A stretch of 64,000 nucleotides of DNA from Macrostomum hystrix (taxonomy: Eukaryota > Animalia > Platyhelminthes), in the NCBI GenBank assembly GCA_950097015.1, contig CATNEN010000025.1, positions 4,650,001 to 4,714,000 of the forward strand, read 5' to 3'. Made by a program: the position numbers and the translations under genes. The notes beneath the pieces are model-generated. The model was not told the DNA's origin, ran no database searches, and saw only the letters and a program-made list of their open reading frames with translations. Shown one piece after another: positions 3,227 through 51,254 of the stretch. Positions within the stretch are counted from its first letter, which is position 1. Every line of letters begins with the position of its first letter.

Positions 3227-4124
3227 TGGTTTATACGCCTTTTTTCAGCATGTTGCAGTCTTCTCAGTGATTTTACTTTGTATTTGATAGACTTTAAGAA
3301 AAATTGAGCGATAACTCTAATGCAATAGAATGATCTGATTTAATTTAATAAATTGATAATCAACTAGTAACTGAAGTTCTGCTTGAATCGGATCTTGAAG
3401 CGGCTGCTGTGGCGGCAGAAGTTGCACCTCCGCCTGCGGTGGAAGAGGCTGCTGCTGCTGCAGCTTCGCACCTGAGCTGATGCTCCCATAGACTGCGCAG
3501 AATATCTGAAAAATTTAATGTCGTTGCGGGGAACACTCTCGCACCAAGGTCCCTAAGCTCGATTCCGCGGCGAAACCACATTCATTTGTGGCTCAGCCGC
3601 GGAGAGAAGGCTTGGTGGCTTGTCCTGCACTTTACGCCCTTGAGGGTCAACCACCAAGGCACAGTGAGAGTGTACACAGTCTGACGATGAGAAAGTCAGA
3701 GCAGATGTACACACCTGTGTGAGCGTGTGCCTGTGTACTATATTTGTGTGCGTGTGTGCTCAGGAGTCAGCGAAATGGGCAGAACTGCCTCCTCGCAGGC
3801 TGCAGTCCTGCAATTATTTTTTGCAAGCACAATTATTTGACGCTTATTTTAATTGAAACTTTAATCAGCCAAAAACTCTACGAAGCTAGATATTTGTACA
3901 TCTAAAGTAGTTCGTGCTGCAGACTAACCAGAAGTTCCGGCCATGTGTTGCCGCATCTGTTCGTCGAAATTTGCCGACTCATCAGTTTCCTGATCTTCCA
4001 ACTCATCGCCCAGACCAGACTGACCGCCATCTGGGAATTCGAAGTCGCCCTGCAGCTCCACAGGTGACGGGCTGTCCAAGAAGCGGCTATTCGAAATGCT
4101 GTAGAAGCGATAAGTCATTGTGTG

Positions 4125-4155
<31 letters not shown>

Positions 4156-5278
4156 TGCAGCGGGGACTGCGGCTGCGGCTGCTGCTGTTGCTGCTGCTGT
4201 TGATCAACGCTGCTCACAGACAGACATGACTCACTGTCCTCTTCAACCATTGTTGACAAAGCGCCTTTGAAAAAGAGGGGCGTGATTTTAGACTAAATGA
4301 ATTAGCGACTCAAGATAATTGAGAATATGAGGTTGCTGAGTAAAATTAGGTAACTGGATGCTCACTTCAGTTTCTTCTAATTAGGAAATTTCAACCTTTT
4401 TTAGGATTCTAAGAAGCACTCGACGAGAGAGAAAGATTGGTCGAGGGCTCATCTGCCGGTCTATTCGTGGCCCAGGCTTCGTTTGCAACAAAAGTACTCA
4501 CTCATTAGGCAACCGAAGACATTTCTTGATGGCTTTTTGAGTGCCGCTTTTTCAGACCGCTTAGAAGACGACTTAGACGGCAACCTGTACATTTTTTAAT
4601 TAGAGCAGTTATAAACTCAATAAATTTCTGAATATTATCTATTGACGCAAATAAAAACAGACGATCTTTACCTGTAACATAAACTTTTAAACTTCAAAAC
4701 GAAATATTTCAGAATTCTGAATGCATTGGAAGTACACATCATTATTTTTTTCTCATTCACTAATGTTCTGCCTCAAGAATCAAGATAATAGGCTTTATGT
4801 GCAATTTTATTATAAAGCTTGTAAAGCAAGCACTTAACTTAACTTTTTATATAAAAAACTATTATCTGAATAAAGGAACGAAAAAAAAGCATTAAAACCA
4901 CTACTTAAATAAAACATAATTTTTTAATTTAATTTTGGGTTACCATCTTCATTTTTGTTAACCTAAAAGCCAAAAAATATAGATATTTTTACATATAATG
5001 ATACTTATTACACTCTTAATGATTAACAGAAAAATCTAATTTAACTTTATTCATTGTTAGAAGGTAACAAAGACCTTGGATTTCTCACCCTATTGCTGAC
5101 TGGTCCAAATCTTGCACTTTTAATTTCTCGCTTCGCTGGACAACTTCAACAATGAGCTCCTTAGAATGGTCCGACAGAAAGTGCACTGTTATTAGCTTCG
5201 TCTTTCCAGGTGGAGTTAACTTCAATTCTGTTTTGTCCACCATGGTGAAGTTATGAATAGTCTTTCTGTGAGTGGCAG
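3227..5278 (-). CDS. Unidentified multi-exon protein with polyQ and polyA tracts (5' and 3' ends unresolved)
   Basis: Five exons join in phase with GT-AG sites: 5278-5089, 4584-4502, 4264-3929, 3505-3372, 3291-3227. Translation ...IHNFTMVDKTELKL...DQSAIG|LPSKSSSKRSEKAALKKPSRNVFGCLM|SALSTMVEEDSESC..polyQ..GTS|DILRSLWEHQLRCEAAAA..RTS|SIKYKVKSLRRLQHAEKRRIN. No family recognised. Confidence 0.65.
3535..3815. mobile_element. Dispersed repeat, copy 1 (in an intron of the minus-strand gene)
   Basis: Shares long blocks (GACGATGAGAAAGTC, CTCAGGAGTCAGCGAAA, GCACCAAGGTCCCT) with 48160-48470 and 51550-51740, which are in the opposite orientation. Confidence 0.7.
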
Positions 5279-45840: not shown

Positions 45841-46191
45841 TAATAATCCTCATCAAATTCATTTGTCACGCCCGAGTTCGCTTCTCTCCAATCAGATCTA
45901 CACCCATCTTTATTGGCTCGCACCAGTGCACTTATTCGACTAGTAAAGACTCGGTAGCTAAACGAAGAAGCAGGCATGACCTGATCCTGACTTTTCTATC
46001 CTTCTCAGTTAGTATTGTATATTTTCTTACAACTAAAAAGTAAAAAACGATCAGGAAAATTGAAGGCTGTGCTGGAAAACTATCTGGTAAGTTAAGATTG
46101 CAACAGTCCGTAAAAGACCTGAAGCTCCTCTTCTTTGAAAATCCTAATTTGTTATCCTGATGAATGTCGTAGGACCCGTCAGAATAGCTGG

Positions 46192-46817
46192 ATGTCGCTT
46201 CAACTATCTCCGCTGCTGCTGGTACTGGTGCTAGTGCTGATGCTAGTTATACCAGCTCTAACCTCACCAAAGTTGACCCTCGAGCAGGCGATCAAGCAGA
46301 ACAGATACGCGCACATGCGCATTCGCTCCTGCAATCTGCCGAAGCTGCTCAACACCATCAAGGTGCTGTGCAGACACGTCACTGTGTACAACAGCGCCAA
46401 TTCCGACTGCATCAAGCCGCCAGCCAGAAAACGAAACGCGGACTTCACCAAGCTGCAGTTGCTGCCAGAGGAAAACGCATCGATTGCGCCGTGGAACAAC
46501 ATGGACCCAGGTGAGTGCGCCATTCCTCTTATTGTGCCTTCATCAAATGAACGATCTCATTGACGTTCATCAACTCGACTACGCCTGTCGTTTCAGCGGA
46601 GAGAGTCGTGCTGGATGCGTGCTGCACCGGGCACTGCAACTACTGCATGCTGCAACTGTACTGCTGCAACACGCCAGTGTGAGTACTCGCTCACTCTGAT
46701 ATTCGTTTTGATTCGAAGCAATCCCTTCATTATCAGAATCCAGTGCATTGGGACTGCTAAATTTGTTTCAGATGGGCCAAGAAGTTCTGCTACTACACAA
46801 TGCCGTACGACGCTTAA
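46192..46817 (+). CDS. Insulin-like prepropeptide A (10 Cys), 148 aa
   Basis: Exons 46192-46510, 46597-46678, 46772-46817 in phase. Signal peptide MSLQLSPLLLVLVLVLMLVIPALT; B-domain RIRSCNLPKLLNTIKVLC...DCIKPPARKR; C-peptide; A-domain VVLDACCTGHCNYCMLQLYCCNTPVWAKKFCYYTMPYDA* matching CC-x3-C-x8-C. Confidence 0.88.
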
Positions 46818-47240
46818 CTGAGGGAGCTGAGAGAACTTGACAACATCAGGATGGGAGAGAACTTCAGGCTGATGAACGTCTTAGTGGTATTCGAAACAAC
46901 GAATCCCTCCCTTGTGGCTGTGGCGGAACTGCTTAGCAAGGAATGTATTTGCAAAGGATCAACTTGTCATTCTTCAAACTTCCCTCTTCTCTGTGCTTGT
47001 TTACGCTCGCGCGCCCTCCTATTGTACTTTATCCTCTCTCCCTCTATCTGTTTAACTTCTTAGCTAACCTTCACTTACTTCTCTTTCCTTTCCCTCGCCT
47101 CTGATTGGCTAGCTGCTCGTCTCTCTTTCCCCACCCCCTGGCCCGTCCTCACTCGTGTTATTCTGCCCCCTCCTTATCTCGTTAATATATTTGATTCTCG
47201 GCCTAGAACTAGTGGGCTTGGGCCTGCCGTTCGATTCGTT

Positions 47241-47345
47241 CAGTGCCGTAAACACTGGCTCTGACTGCGAAGTCTCAATTTAATTTAATAAGTCACTACA
47301 TAACTGAATACACGAGTGGCTATAGTTATTTTAAATGTCAGTTTT
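47241..47345 (+). ncRNA. Spliced-leader-RNA-like structured segment (variant or pseudogene)
   Basis: 47245-47282 matches 33/38 ungapped to the Macrostomum SL sequence as I recall it. Three stem-loops and a downstream T-rich tract are present, but the terminal ATG is missing. Confidence 0.4.
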
Positions 47346-48159
47346 GGCGAGTACACACTGCAGTTGGAGACGCAAAATTACGTACTCGGAGCTTTTTTAA
47401 ATTTTCTTTTTTTTAACGGGCGGTGCTATACCAATTTCAACTAAACTTGAACAAAAGTGGATCTCGTTTGTATAACTTCTATTTGCACCTACTGCACAAT
47501 ATTTTCTCTTAGGGAACTCTCGGTCTCACAGATCCCAATGTTTCGCAAGCTAACTTATTGTTTCCTAGTCTAAAAGAAGATAGAGTACCTCTCAACTCAG
47601 GCTTGCAGATTTCTTGTAAAATTTCGGCTGAATAATATTGTCTATTAGTAGCTCCTGTTTTTCACTCATTCAAAACGGCTGTGGTCCCAAGGACCCAGGT
47701 TCCCATGAGACAATAGCCCCCAGGCCTCACAGAGCTATCTATGCTCTCTATCATTGCAGTGCAGTACAGCATGAGCTGTTAGTATCTGACCGCCCCATAG
47801 CCTGCTAATTTCCTTAAGGAAATAATATGATAAGCCAAACCGTATGCGAATCCACGGTTCCCTTAGAATTGGTGTGAAAGCTCAGGTATTTCCATGAGCT
47901 TGAAGTTATTCACCAGATTTCGTGTGTGATTTCAAAAACCCTAGTCCATTTACGAGCGTATATTGGAAATTATCCCTTTCAGACTTTTTCATTCCTCTTT
48001 CCACAAGAATGCTACTATCTTCCCCGTATTATCAGGGTCAGTCCAAGCTCGAATCTCCTATGTTTTCGTCGCTGCAAGAACAGCAAAGCATCCATTTTTA
48101 AGGACTGTAAACTCTTACGGTAAACTGCGTCAGACACTTGAGTATGCTTAATTATTATT

Positions 48160-48470
48160 ATTACTTGCAGGAGGGGCTGTGGGCAATGGCACATCATTTG
48201 GCGACAGTTGAAGCAATTCTGCCCGTTTCGCTGACTCCTGAGCACACTCGCTCACTGGTACTGTACGCAGGCACACACGCACACAGCTGTGTACATGTAC
48301 GCCGACTTTCTCATCGTCAGGCAGTGTACACCTTCACTGTGCCTTGGAGGTTGGCCTTCAATGTCGCAATTTGCACAAGCCCCAAGCCTTATCTCCGCCG
48401 GAAGGCCCCAAATGAATTTGAATCGAGGTCAGGGACCTTGGTGCGAGAGGCAAACGCTTTAGACCGCTCT
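48160..48470. mobile_element. Dispersed repeat, copy 2
   Basis: Homologous to 3535-3815 (inverted) and 51550-51740. Begins at TTGCAGG. Confidence 0.7.
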
Positions 48471-48904
48471 GCTACTCACCAAACTGTGGAGTACTCAGTA
48501 CGAAAATATTGTTCTTACTGATTCACTGCCATCTAACTGACTGGCTGCTGGCCTAACGATGACGTTAACAGATGTCTAAATTTGAGCACTAGTCCGTGAG
48601 CTGCTTTAGCAGTCCGTTCCGAGCCTACAGCAGCTTAGTCTTTGGTTGAGCCGCCATTAACGCATTCGCTGCCCAATCAAAGCCATTTCGGTGCCGAATC
48701 ATCTCAATAGGTGCCTTTCACCCATTCTCATGGACTTGATTGGACGCCGCAGTCTATAAAGCTAGCAGCAATTTTCGGCCTCTTTAGTCAGTCCTTGCTT
48801 CCAGGTACGGCTGACAAGGTAACACTAGACTATATCATTTTTTTCGCAAATAGCACAGTTGCTTCCATTTCGGTCCAGCTTGGAATAATTTAATGCTAGT
48901 TAAA

Positions 48905-49701
48905 ATGCCCGCTAGAACTGTCTGCAGAGGTGAAAGGCTTCTTGGTGAGTGAAGAAAACTGCTAAACATCTCTTCAGCACTTTCGACCTACTGTCTACAT
49001 CTGTCTACTGTCTAGGTCGAGTGATTCTCTCATTTGCTTTCTTCCCTTTGCAGGATCTGCTCAACGAAGCTGGCTGCCGATCCCACTGCCTCCGCTACTG
49101 CTGCTGCTGATGCTAATGCTGCTGGTACCACCGGCTTTGGCCACCACAAAATTGACCCTGGAACAGGCCAACCGGCTAAACGAGTACGCGCACAAGCGGA
49201 TTCGCTCCTGCAATTTGCCGAAGCTACTCAGAACCATCAATGCGCTGTGCAGAGATGTCGGCCTGTACAACATTAGCAATCCTGCGTGTATCAAGCGGCC
49301 AGCAAGCAGCAAGCGGAACGTGGACTTCACCAAGCTGCAGGTACTGCCGGAGGATGGACCGGTCGTGCCTTGGAGCGACATGGACCCAGGTGAGTGCGCC
49401 ATTCCTCTTATTTTGTCTTCATCGAACGAACTATCTCCTTGACGTTCATGAACTCGGCTCCGCCTGTCGTTTCAGCGGAGAGAGTCGTGCTGGATGCGTG
49501 CTGCACCGAGTACTGCAACTACTGCATGCTGCAACTGTACTGCTGCAACACGCCAGTGTGAGTACTCGCTCACTCTGATACTCTTTTTTATAATGCTTCA
49601 ATGCCTTCAATATCAGAGTCCAGTGCATTGAGGCCTCCAATTTAACCTGTTTCAGATGGGCCAAGAAGTTCTGCTACTACACAATGCCGTACGACGCTTA
49701 A
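48905..49701 (+). CDS. Insulin-like prepropeptide B (10 Cys), tandem paralog of A
   Basis: Exons 48905-48944, 49054-49389, 49476-49557, 49656-49701 in phase (an in-frame ATG at 48893 is an alternative start). B-domain KRIRSCNLPKLLRTINALC...ACIKRPASSKR; A-domain VVLDACCTEYCNYCMLQLYCCNTPVWAKKFCYYTMPYDA*. Confidence 0.88.
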
Positions 49702-51254
49702 CTGAGGGAGCTTAGAGAACTCTACCTGAGGAGCTTCAGGTTGACGAACTGTTCAGTCACATTCCAAATTGACTAGTTTGGTGTACTGAACTGTGACGAC
49801 TTTTATGAAGCGCAAACATGAGTTGCTGGTTGCCAATCGCAAGTTGCTGTCGGCATTGCATCAGATTTTTGTGCACTTTGTCACTTTAATAAACATTAAG
49901 TGACATTTTGAAAGGCATAGATTAAGGCAAGCATATCAAAGCAAGCCGACTTTTCGTTTCCTTCATATTTTACTTGTTTCTTTGCTGCTTTTATGAGACA
50001 TGGAACGGATAAGACACGGAAGAGATGAGACAGTGGAGCGATGACTGACCAGAGAAAAGACACTGGAGAGATGAGACAAGGGAGAAGAGTTGGAAGGGCC
50101 TTGGACCGGATTAAGGACATTGCGGCCGGTATCTTAGGCGCTGATTGGAACGCTCGTGTGTTCAACTTTGATTACCTGATATCTACACGGAGACGCAAAA
50201 TAGTTGTTGTCAGACGCTGGAACGATTTTATTAACCTCTACTTGACTGCAGCAGGCTGTAAGCCCTCACTGCCGTTGCCGACGGCAATGCCGAAAACGGC
50301 CATAGACAGCTGCCACATCTATGAACGTATCTGTTGCTAATCCCAGTTTCAGTCGATAGTCTATAGTCCATAGTCTATGGTGTACGAGGGTAGTGAAATA
50401 TTGCCTATTCACATATCCGCTTCTGCTTTTTGCTTCTATATTTTCTCGCGCTTCGCCGTTTTTCCCAACTTGATTTTGCCCAAGACCAAACAATACTGAA
50501 TATCAAAATAAAAGTCCATCGCGTGCAATACTCAATATCTAAATAAAAGTCCAACGTTGTCTTAATGCCACGCCATCACACAAATTTACCCGACTGTGAT
50601 AAATAATGACCCGATGAACTACTAACTATACTTCTAGTTTAAGTGCACTTATAGACTAAAGATTTCTGTGGGGGCGTGTTTGAAAGGGAGAGTCCCACAG
50701 GCTGATTGATAAAGCTTTAGAAAGAATTTCTATAGAAAAAGTGTACGAAAAGAGATAACAGAAATAATTAGACATTGCGTAAGGTCTTTTGTCGGCGCCT
50801 GTTTTGCTCATGGATAATCAGGAGGCTGAAGAGAGTGATTCACATCTAGACAGAGATTAGAGCACGCCCCTCACTGCAGCCACCTCAACGGCAGTCTCAT
50901 TGTATATCAATTCAATTAGCAATTCTTTAATTACAGTAATATTTAATAATATCCCCTGAGAGATGAGCCATCCGCCCACCTGTGCGGCTCAAAATTTTAT
51001 TGAGTCCGGCAGAAAGCGAGTTTCGAGTTTAAGAACTATAGCTTATGCGCTTAAGGGTGTGGCCGGTGCGTTTGAAGTGACAAAACTAGTGTCACTTCAA
51101 ACCGGGATTGATTTCTGCCAAGAGCGAACAGTCTGAGTAAAGCTGGGAAAATTCATTATTCACCATTTTTATTGACCACTTCACATTTTAGCCTATTTAC
51201 CTTCCAGTAAATTAGGCTTAATTTATTAAGAAATTATTTTAGAAATCGACAAGT

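What the first reader, a model, noticed from the sequence alone, without database searches (positions are those of the whole stretch)
46192..49701. Tandem pair of insulin-superfamily peptides with a non-canonical 10-cysteine scaffold
Neither gene is visible in the ORF track; splicing is needed. Seen: signal peptide, B-domain C-x12-C (canonical spacing is x11) plus a third Cys before a KR site, C-peptide, and an A-domain with the exact CC-x3-C-x8-C motif. Seen: three extra A-domain Cys (one inside the x8 spacer, one adjacent to the last canonical Cys, one in a WAKKFCYYTMPYDA tail on its own exon). Established: classical insulins have 6 Cys and some invertebrate ILPs have 8. Inference: five disulfides and a lineage-specific ILP class with possibly distinct receptor use.
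Basis: partly seen in the sequence, partly recalled or inferred. Interest (0 to 1): 0.8.

Follow-up and report, generated by a model that had tools for sequence, protein, structure and literature searches.

The report
Tandem ten-cysteine flatworm insulin-like genes
Two neighbouring spliced genes in the flatworm Macrostomum hystrix encode secreted insulin-family peptides with ten cysteines instead of six; they are real, conserved in a sister species that already has a database entry, and are an unusual variant of a well-known hormone family.

Summary
Two paralogous genes sit on the + strand at 46192-46817 and 48905-49701. Each has canonical GT-AG introns. Each encodes a signal peptide, a B domain (C-x12-C plus a distal Cys), a conserved KR site, a connecting region, an A domain (CC-x3-C-x8-C plus two extra Cys) and a tail exon with a tenth Cys.

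An exhaustive profile search found one relative cluster: Macrostomum lignano proteins of 152 and 167 aa. They have the same ten Cys and the same intron positions and phases. Both pass Pfam's Insulin gathering score, and UniProt already labels them insulin-like. The A-domain exon alone finds insulin and IGF A chains in the PDB.

dN/dS is 0.18-0.36, so the genes are under purifying selection. The 3' halves of the two copies look homogenised by gene conversion.

An uncalled eight-Cys paralogue beside the M. lignano gene lacks two of the extra Cys together and keeps the other two. This suggests how the two extra disulfides pair.

Ten-Cys insulin-like peptides are not unprecedented: locust aIGF has ten.

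No RNA run was listed, and the structure models were too weak to show a fold. The joined M. hystrix proteins were not searched or folded.

The scan had noted other, eight-Cys insulin genes in this genome, but not this pair.

The parts
46192..46510 (+). Gene 1, first coding exon: start codon, signal peptide, conserved N-terminal extension, B domain (C-x12-C, distal third Cys), RKR site and connecting region. Ends in a phase-1 donor.
   Evidence: dN/dS 0.35 against gene 2 and 0.36 against M. lignano.
46511..46596 (+). Gene 1 intron 1 (86 nt, GTGAGT...TTTCAG, phase 1). It sits at the connecting-region position typical of insulin-family genes.
46597..46678 (+). Gene 1 A-domain exon: CC-x3-C-x8-C, with an extra Cys in the spacer and an extra Cys next to the last canonical one.
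   Evidence: (DILP5 A chain, E 0.0049).
46679..46771 (+). Gene 1 intron 2 (93 nt, phase 2).
   Evidence: Same position and phase in M. lignano.
46772..46817 (+). Gene 1 tail exon: a 14-residue tail with W-x4-C (the tenth Cys), then the stop codon.
   Evidence: 4 synonymous and 0 nonsynonymous differences against M. lignano.
48905..48944 (+). Gene 2 probable first exon, with an ATG and a phase-1 donor. This is inferred.
   Evidence: Sequence. The frame joins 49054 onward. The 167-aa M. lignano model also starts in an upstream exon.
49054..49389 (+). Gene 2 exon with signal peptide, B domain, SKR site and connecting region.
   Evidence: dN/dS 0.23 against M. lignano.
49476..49557 (+). Gene 2 A-domain exon. 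It is 97.6% identical to that of gene 1.
49656..49701 (+). Gene 2 tail exon with stop codon. It is identical to that of gene 1.
49888..49893 (+). AATAAA about 190 nt after the gene 2 stop: a candidate polyadenylation signal. None lies within 1.5 kb after the gene 1 stop.

Best explanation
These are two functional, tandemly duplicated genes of Macrostomum hystrix. They encode secreted prepro-peptides of a divergent, Macrostomum-restricted branch of the insulin/IGF/relaxin superfamily.

Likely mechanism, inferred:
- The signal peptide is removed.
- The three canonical insulin disulfides form: B first Cys to A CC, B second Cys to A last canonical Cys, and the intra-A bond.
- Two extra bridges staple the extensions. 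Most likely the distal B Cys pairs with the Cys next to the last canonical A Cys, as in the extra inter-chain bond of nematode beta-class peptides. The spacer Cys then pairs with the tail Cys.
- A prohormone convertase cuts at the conserved KR after the B domain.
- No basic site is conserved at the connecting-region/A boundary, and the connecting region is itself conserved. So the product is probably a two-chain peptide whose A chain keeps the connecting segment, or an uncut IGF-like single chain.
- The peptide most likely signals through the worm's insulin-receptor-type tyrosine kinase. A-chain positions equivalent to A2/A3, A16 and A19 keep insulin-like residues, and so does a Gly-aliphatic-Tyr stretch after the second B Cys.
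For: Gene structure and coding:
- Canonical splice sites with frames that join.
- The same three coding exons and intron phases in M. lignano, with introns of different length and sequence.

Family:
- The orthologues P0001 and P0002 score 27.3 and 26.8 bits against a cut-off of 23 for PF00049.
- The A exon alone gives 20 insulin/IGF chains among 26 PDB hits, best E 0.0049.
- A profile of the family hits IGF-II and DILP5.
- The nearest ESM Atlas clusters are all insulin family, top score 0.91.
- The phase-1 intron matches the three canonical insulin-like genes of the same genome.

Constraint:
- dN/dS is 0.23-0.36 in exon 1 and 0.18-0.22 in the A and tail exons.
- The tail exon has 4 synonymous and 0 nonsynonymous changes.
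- All ten Cys are conserved in four sequences.

Cys pairing:
- An uncalled M. lignano paralogue 3 kb upstream of the orthologue has the same x12 B spacing, intron phases and W-x4-C tail.
- It lacks both the distal B Cys and the second terminal A Cys. It keeps the spacer and tail Cys.

Processing:
- KR is conserved in all copies.
- M. lignano has no basic residue at the connecting-region/A boundary.

Transcript basis of the orthologue:
- M. lignano gene names of this type come from an RNA-seq-guided transcript assembly (PMC5730564).
Against: - No RNA run was listed for this stretch, so expression and junctions in M. hystrix are not shown directly.
- Exon pieces alone hit no Pfam family, and the B piece alone hits no insulin in the PDB.
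- B spacing is x12, and the Gly after the first B Cys is replaced by Asn.
- The AlphaFold models were poor (mean pLDDT 38.9 and 53.1). Neither Foldseek nor VIA-align recovered an insulin fold.
- The paralogue used for the pairing argument is my own splice model and is not in the protein collection.
- Receptor and processing are inference only.
Confidence: 0.8

Rival explanations
1. They are genuine insulin-fold peptides, but they do not act as insulin-receptor agonists. They could be ligands of another receptor class (relaxin-type LGR or Venus kinase receptor), or antagonists or decoys of the insulin receptor. The extra bridges and the retained connecting segment would change the binding surface.
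For: - The nearest ESM Atlas cluster is labelled arthropod insulin-like peptide 7, a relaxin-like group (a lead only).
- The scaffold is strongly altered: x12 spacing, no Gly after the first B Cys, two extra bridges and a conserved tail.
- C. elegans insulin-like peptides include antagonists (bioRxiv 10.1101/336750).
- Earlier scan notes report several Venus kinase receptor genes in this genome (not tested here).
Against: - No conserved Arg-x3-Arg-x2-Ile/Val relaxin cassette is visible in the B helix of the four sequences (the motif is from established knowledge).
- Insulin-like residues are kept at A2/A3, A16 and A19, and in the stretch after the second B Cys.
- No receptor data of any kind are available.
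Confidence: 0.12
2. The insulin fold has been recruited for a non-endocrine secreted role, for example a reproductive or glandular secretion. The local duplication and faster evolution of gene 1 would reflect that use.
For: - The family is restricted to the genus.
- The duplication is lineage-specific: dS is 0.57 between copies against 0.92 between species.
- Gene 1 evolves faster: dN to M. lignano is 0.33 against 0.21 for gene 2.
- Extra disulfides are typical of stable extracellular secretions (general knowledge).
Against: - dN/dS stays well below 1 in all comparisons.
- The tail and A domain are nearly invariant between species.
- No expression data place the genes in any tissue.
Confidence: 0.05
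3. The models are wrong or the genes are dead: the exon-like pieces are chance Cys-rich ORFs or unexpressed pseudogene copies.
For: - No RNA run was listed.
- The word search found no M. hystrix protein for exon 1.
- No AATAAA follows gene 1 within 1.5 kb.
Against: - Frames are intact and splice sites canonical in both copies and in M. lignano.
- Selection is purifying.
- Exons 2 and 3 are more conserved than the introns beside them.
- The orthologue passes the Pfam cut-off.
Confidence: 0.03

Closest known systems
Macrostomum lignano Mlig005970 proteins (PAA68463.1 / UniProt A0A267F414, 152 aa; PAA69009.1 / A0A1I8H0G4, 167 aa)
   Same: - Orthologues: 54-70% identity in the B/connecting exon, 69-73% in the A exon and 100% in the tail.
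- The same ten Cys, the same x12 B spacing, the same KR site, and the same intron positions and phases.
   Different: - One ten-Cys copy per locus in M. lignano, with a divergent eight-Cys neighbour upstream. M. hystrix has two ten-Cys copies.
- M. lignano has no basic residue before the A domain.
- The database names are automatic. The searched paper library mentions neither the gene nor a Macrostomum ten-Cys peptide.
Described flatworm insulin-like peptides (schistosome SjILP/SmILP type; also three loci of this genome, L003-L005)
   Same: - Same superfamily and same phylum.
- Signal peptide, then B, connecting and A order.
- A phase-1 intron in the connecting region.
- More than six Cys.
   Different: - The described type has the A-chain signature CCC-x2-C-x8-C (PMC5391603), an upstream A Cys, and B spacing x11 with Cys-Gly.
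- The present pair has no third consecutive Cys and has x12 spacing with Cys-Asn.
- Its extra Cys lie elsewhere, and it has an additional tail exon.
C. elegans beta-class insulin-like peptides (INS-1 to INS-10, DAF-28)
   Same: - Three canonical bonds plus one extra inter-chain bond (bioRxiv 10.1101/336750).
- From established knowledge (Pierce et al. 2001; the INS-6 structure), that bond links a Cys after the second B Cys to a Cys next to the last A Cys. This is the arrangement proposed here for one extra pair.
   Different: - No hit to Pfam Ins_beta PF03488.
- The distal B Cys lies 12-13 residues after the second B Cys, not about 3.
- A long connecting region is present.
- There is a fifth bridge and a tail exon.
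Locust arthropod IGF (aIGF)
   Same: Ten Cys, four more than a typical insulin-like peptide, with five disulfide bridges predicted (PMC8220825).
   Different: A different phylum and a long IGF-like protein. The positions of its extra Cys were not compared here, and no specific relationship was tested.
Drosophila DILP5 and vertebrate IGF-II A domains
   Same: They are the best solved-structure matches of the A exon and of the family profile. Shared features are the CC-x3-C-x8-C motif and hydrophobic residues at the A2/A3, A16 and A19 equivalents.
   Different: They have six Cys only, x11 B spacing and no tail. The matches are short, with E values of 0.005-0.3.

Membership tests
Insulin/IGF/relaxin superfamily (Pfam PF00049) | Profile match above the curated gathering score | tested here: met
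   - The M. lignano orthologues score 27.3 and 26.8 bits against a cut-off of 23, over profile positions 8-81 of 81.
- The window's own exon pieces give no hit, because the domain is split by a frame-shifting intron.
- The joined M. hystrix protein was not scanned.
Insulin/IGF/relaxin superfamily (Pfam PF00049) | A-domain Cys motif CC-x3-C-x8-C | tested here: met
   Present in both genes. It aligns with the motif of canonical flatworm peptides and with the DILP5 and insulin A chains.
Insulin/IGF/relaxin superfamily (Pfam PF00049) | B-domain C-x11-C, usually with Gly after the first Cys | tested here: not met
   - Spacing is x12 and the first Cys is followed by Asn in all four Macrostomum sequences and in the eight-Cys paralogue.
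- The Pfam profile still aligns across the B domain in the orthologues.
- The hydrophobic periodicity counted back from the second Cys fits the B helix (inference).
Insulin/IGF/relaxin superfamily (Pfam PF00049) | Precursor order signal-B-connecting-A, with basic processing sites | tested here: inconclusive
   - The order is met.
- KR after the B domain is conserved.
- The connecting-region/A boundary has a single Arg in M. hystrix and no basic residue in M. lignano.
Insulin/IGF/relaxin superfamily (Pfam PF00049) | Phase-1 intron in the connecting region | tested here: met
   Phase-1 donor at 46510/46511 and at 49389/49390. The phase is the same in L003, L004 and L005 and in M. lignano.
Insulin/IGF/relaxin superfamily (Pfam PF00049) | Insulin fold (B helix packed on two A helices, three bridges) | tested here: inconclusive
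   - AlphaFold2 on the orthologue gave mean pLDDT 38.9 and 53.1. Helices fall at the expected B and A positions.
- Foldseek and VIA-align gave no meaningful insulin match.
Insulin/IGF/relaxin superfamily (Pfam PF00049) | Binding to an insulin-type or relaxin-type receptor | not testable with these tools
   This needs binding or activation assays.
Described flatworm insulin-like peptide type | A-chain signature CCC-x2-C-x8-C (PMC5391603) | tested here: not met
   The pair has CC followed by Thr, not a third Cys. The own-genome loci L003-L005 do carry the signature.
Nematode beta-type insulin (Pfam PF03488 Ins_beta) | Profile match | tested here: not met
   PF03488 is not among the hits of P0001 or P0002 even at E up to 10.

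The most novel reading that the evidence does not exclude
Macrostomum carries a genus-specific class of insulin-fold hormones. Two extra disulfides lock a B-chain extension and a separately encoded C-terminal tail onto the core, and the connecting segment stays attached. This would create a binding surface that selects a receptor other than the canonical insulin receptor, or that antagonises it. It would be an independent signalling axis in a stem-cell and regeneration model.
Probability: 0.12. Interest if true: 0.6.

Novelty: new variant of a known kind. Interest (0 to 1): 0.4.

Why it matters
Insulin signalling controls growth, stem-cell activity and the germline in flatworms, and Macrostomum is the flatworm genus with working transgenesis. 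A conserved, divergent insulin-like peptide gives a concrete candidate ligand to knock down or tag in M. lignano (Mlig005970). It has five probable disulfides, a retained connecting segment and a tail on its own exon.

For peptide chemists it is a natural example of extra stapling of the insulin fold. The eight-Cys paralogue gives a testable prediction of which Cys pair.

It is not a new kind of system. The family is known, the orthologue is already in databases with an automatic insulin-like label, and ten-Cys insulin-like proteins have been reported in locusts.

Tried and rejected
- **Pfam on single exon pieces:** nothing. This is uninformative because the domain is split.
- **Word search with exon 1 and with the M. 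lignano paralogue exon:** no relatives.
- **PDB search with the B piece:** only a chance hit to a pterin synthase.
- **Structure:** two AlphaFold2 runs on the orthologue with shallow alignments, then Foldseek against the PDB and VIA-align wide. These gave only generic helical matches (Z up to 6.2) and stray IGF rows at E 6-9, so they count neither for nor against the fold.
- I rebuilt it without that row and did not send that row anywhere else.
- **Candidate third paralogue on contig C5:** a poly-Leu and minisatellite artefact.
- **M. hystrix orthologue of the eight-Cys M. lignano paralogue:** not found with that query.
- **Synteny beyond the genes:** none detected by tblastx.
- **Typed peptide script:** I replaced it with coordinate references.
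- **Joined proteins:** the joined spliced M. hystrix proteins were not searched, scanned or folded, following the operators' rule. I used exons by reference and the full-length M. lignano proteins instead.
Full report
**What is there**

The + strand between 46192 and 49701 holds two paralogous genes.

- Gene 1 has coding exons 46192-46510, 46597-46678 and 46772-46817, giving 148 codons.
- Gene 2 has the homologous exons 49054-49389, 49476-49557 and 49656-49701. The frame stays open upstream of 49054, and an ATG exon with a matching phase-1 donor lies at 48905-48944. That gives 167 codons, the length of the longer M. lignano model.
- All introns are 86-109 nt, with GTGAGT donors and mostly TTTCAG acceptors.

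Each product has these parts:

- a Leu-rich signal peptide;
- a conserved extension of about 20 residues;
- a B domain with C-x12-C and a third Cys 12-13 residues further on;
- a KR site;
- a connecting region of about 27 residues;
- an A domain with CC-x3-C-x8-C, carrying an extra Cys inside the x8 spacer and another right after the last canonical Cys;
- a 14-residue tail on its own exon, with W-x4-C.

**Which genome**

The assembly has 220,453,370 bases in 42 contigs. This matches the published Macrostomum hystrix assembly of about 220 Mb in 42 contigs (PMC10468722). It also agrees with earlier scan notes, and the only relatives found are from M. lignano.

**Is it more than chance?**

- In the whole genome, exon 1 finds only these two copies.
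- The full-length M. lignano protein finds exactly the six exons and nothing else significant.
- The A-type Cys motif occurs three times in the six frames of the window. Two are these genes and one lies in a CTG/CAG microsatellite.

**Relatives**

The word search with exon 1 found nothing. Because that search and the family scans left the protein open, I used the exhaustive HMMER search with a profile of the two mature exon-1 parts. It found exactly one cluster among 1.84 billion representatives, at E 4.6e-28.

- The cluster holds P0001 (152 aa, PAA68463.1) and P0002 (167 aa, PAA69009.1 and PAA82142.1) of M. lignano.
- NCBI names them hypothetical proteins. UniProt names them 'Insulin-like domain-containing protein' and 'IlGF domain-containing protein'.
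- They have the same ten Cys, the same x12 spacing, the KR site and an identical tail.
- The M. lignano locus has the same coding exons, with introns at the same positions and phases but different length and sequence: 114 and 75 nt against 86 and 93-98 nt.
- Gene names of this kind in that assembly come from a genome-guided assembly of RNA-seq reads with TransDecoder ORFs (PMC5730564). The orthologous junctions are therefore very probably transcript-derived. That is my inference from the paper's methods, not a read-level check.

**Family membership**

- Both orthologues pass Pfam's Insulin gathering score: 27.3 and 26.8 bits against 23, covering profile positions 8-81 of 81.
- The 26-residue A exon of the window, searched alone against all PDB chains, has the Drosophila DILP5 A chain as its best hit (E 0.0049). 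Twenty of its 26 hits are insulin, IGF or DILP chains.
- A profile of the family hits IGF-II and DILP5.
- All ten nearest ESM Atlas clusters with a family label are insulin-family. The top one is 'insulin-like peptide 7' at 0.91 (a lead only).
- The intron between the connecting region and the A domain is phase 1. So is the corresponding intron of the three canonical insulin-like genes that PF00049 finds elsewhere in this genome.
- Those three genes carry the described flatworm signature CCC-x2-C-x8-C (PMC5391603), with x11 B spacing and Cys-Gly.
- The present pair does not, so it is a different branch of the superfamily.
- It is also not a Pfam Ins_beta (nematode) member.

**Selection and history**

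| Comparison | Measure |
|---|---|
| Exon 1, gene 1 vs gene 2 | dN/dS 0.35, dS 0.57 |
| Exon 1, gene 1 vs M. lignano | dN/dS 0.36, dS about 0.92, dN 0.33 |
| Exon 1, gene 2 vs M. lignano | dN/dS 0.23, dS about 0.92, dN 0.21 |
| A and tail exons vs M. lignano | dN/dS 0.18-0.22 |
| Tail exon vs M. lignano | 4 synonymous, 0 nonsynonymous differences |

Both copies are therefore under purifying selection. The duplication, or the last homogenisation of exon 1, is younger than the species split. Gene 1 evolves faster than gene 2.

Identity between the two copies is uneven:

| Segment | Identity |
|---|---|
| Exon 1 | 76% |
| Intron 1 | 89.5% |
| Exon 2 | 97.6% |
| Intron 2 | 80.6% |
| Exon 3 | 100% |
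| Upstream region | not alignable |

Identity jumps near 46495. This fits a gene-conversion tract over the 3' half, with added constraint on exons 2 and 3.

**A paralogue that hints at the bridges**

About 3 kb upstream of the M. lignano orthologue lies an uncalled gene with the same architecture. It is intact in a second, 98.8% identical contig copy.

- Shared with the pair: signal peptide, Cys-Asn, x12 spacing, a phase-1 donor, an A domain with the C-x2-C-x5-C arrangement, a phase-2 donor, and a tail exon with W-x4-C.
- Different: an RRRR site in place of KR, and eight Cys.
- It lacks both the distal B Cys and the Cys next to the last canonical A Cys.
- It keeps both the spacer Cys and the tail Cys.

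Joint loss of one pair and joint retention of the other suggests two extra bridges: distal B Cys to the terminal extra A Cys, and spacer Cys to tail Cys.

The first of these resembles the extra inter-chain bond of C. elegans beta-class peptides. The class is defined in bioRxiv 10.1101/336750. The exact Cys positions come from my knowledge of Pierce et al. 2001 and the INS-6 structure.

This is an inference from my own splice model. The paralogue is not in the protein collection, and no M. hystrix counterpart was found with that query.

**Processing and action (inferred)**

- KR after the B domain is conserved in all copies.
- The boundary before the A domain has one Arg in M. hystrix and no basic residue in M. 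lignano.
- The connecting region itself carries conserved motifs.
- I therefore expect a single cut, leaving the connecting segment on the A chain, or no cut at all (IGF-like).
- Several positions keep insulin-like residues: the A2/A3, A16 and A19 equivalents, and a Gly-Leu-Tyr stretch after the second B Cys in gene 2 and in M. lignano (Thr-Val-Tyr in gene 1).
- No relaxin-type Arg cassette is conserved (the motifs are from established knowledge).
- An insulin-receptor-type kinase is therefore the most likely target, but nothing here tests it.
- Earlier notes place an insulin-receptor gene about 2.09 Mb further along the same contig (not checked).

**What failed or was left out**

- No RNA run was listed, and that tool's one call was used.
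- Two AlphaFold2 models of the orthologue were weak, with mean pLDDT 38.9 and 53.1. Helices fall where the B helix and the A helices should be.
- Foldseek and VIA-align gave no usable match. The fold is supported by sequence only.
Exons were used by reference, and the full-length M. lignano proteins served as proxies.

**Novelty**

- The family is known, and the orthologue carries an automatic insulin-like label.
- Ten-Cys insulin-like proteins with five predicted bridges are reported for locust aIGF (PMC8220825).
- In the searchable library I found no description of Macrostomum insulin-like peptides of this type, and no mention of Mlig005970.
- The combination of features is a new variant worth a modest follow-up: x12 B spacing, two extra Cys pairs at these positions, a retained connecting segment and a tail exon.
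- The scan had already noted other, eight-Cys insulin-like genes on other contigs of this genome, but not this pair.

Noticed in passing
L006:6686-7211 (+), M. lignano NIVC01001393.1; the same stretch in L008 at +154: An uncalled insulin-like gene 3 kb upstream of the Mlig005970 orthologue. It has the same x12 B spacing, the same intron phases and a W-x4-C tail exon. It has eight Cys and an RRRR site. It is intact in both contig copies and absent from the protein collection.
   Followed up: partly
window 46495-46840 vs 49375-49725: The 3' halves of the two genes, introns included, are 80-100% identical, while exon 1 is only 76% identical. This looks like a gene-conversion tract that starts near the end of exon 1.
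   Followed up: partly
window 46818-48900: No AATAAA or ATTAAA lies within 1.5 kb after the gene 1 stop, whereas gene 2 has AATAAA at 49888. An AG at 46184-46185, 6 nt before the gene 1 ATG, could be a cis or spliced-leader acceptor. The two genes might share a precursor transcript, as reported for about 7% of M. lignano transcripts (PMC5730564). Another first-stage note flags a spliced-leader-like RNA at 47241-47345.
   Followed up: no
L007 (G000:C5:4151500-4155000), from about 2050 to the end of the locus: A long minisatellite with a unit of about 48 nt. It reads as a 16-residue repeat with scattered stop codons in all three + frames. It caused a spurious weak hit to the signal-peptide part of the query.
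   Followed up: no
window 4100-4230: A CTG/CAG trinucleotide repeat that mimics the CC-x3-C-x8-C motif in one frame. It lies inside overlapping ORFs on both strands.
   Followed up: no
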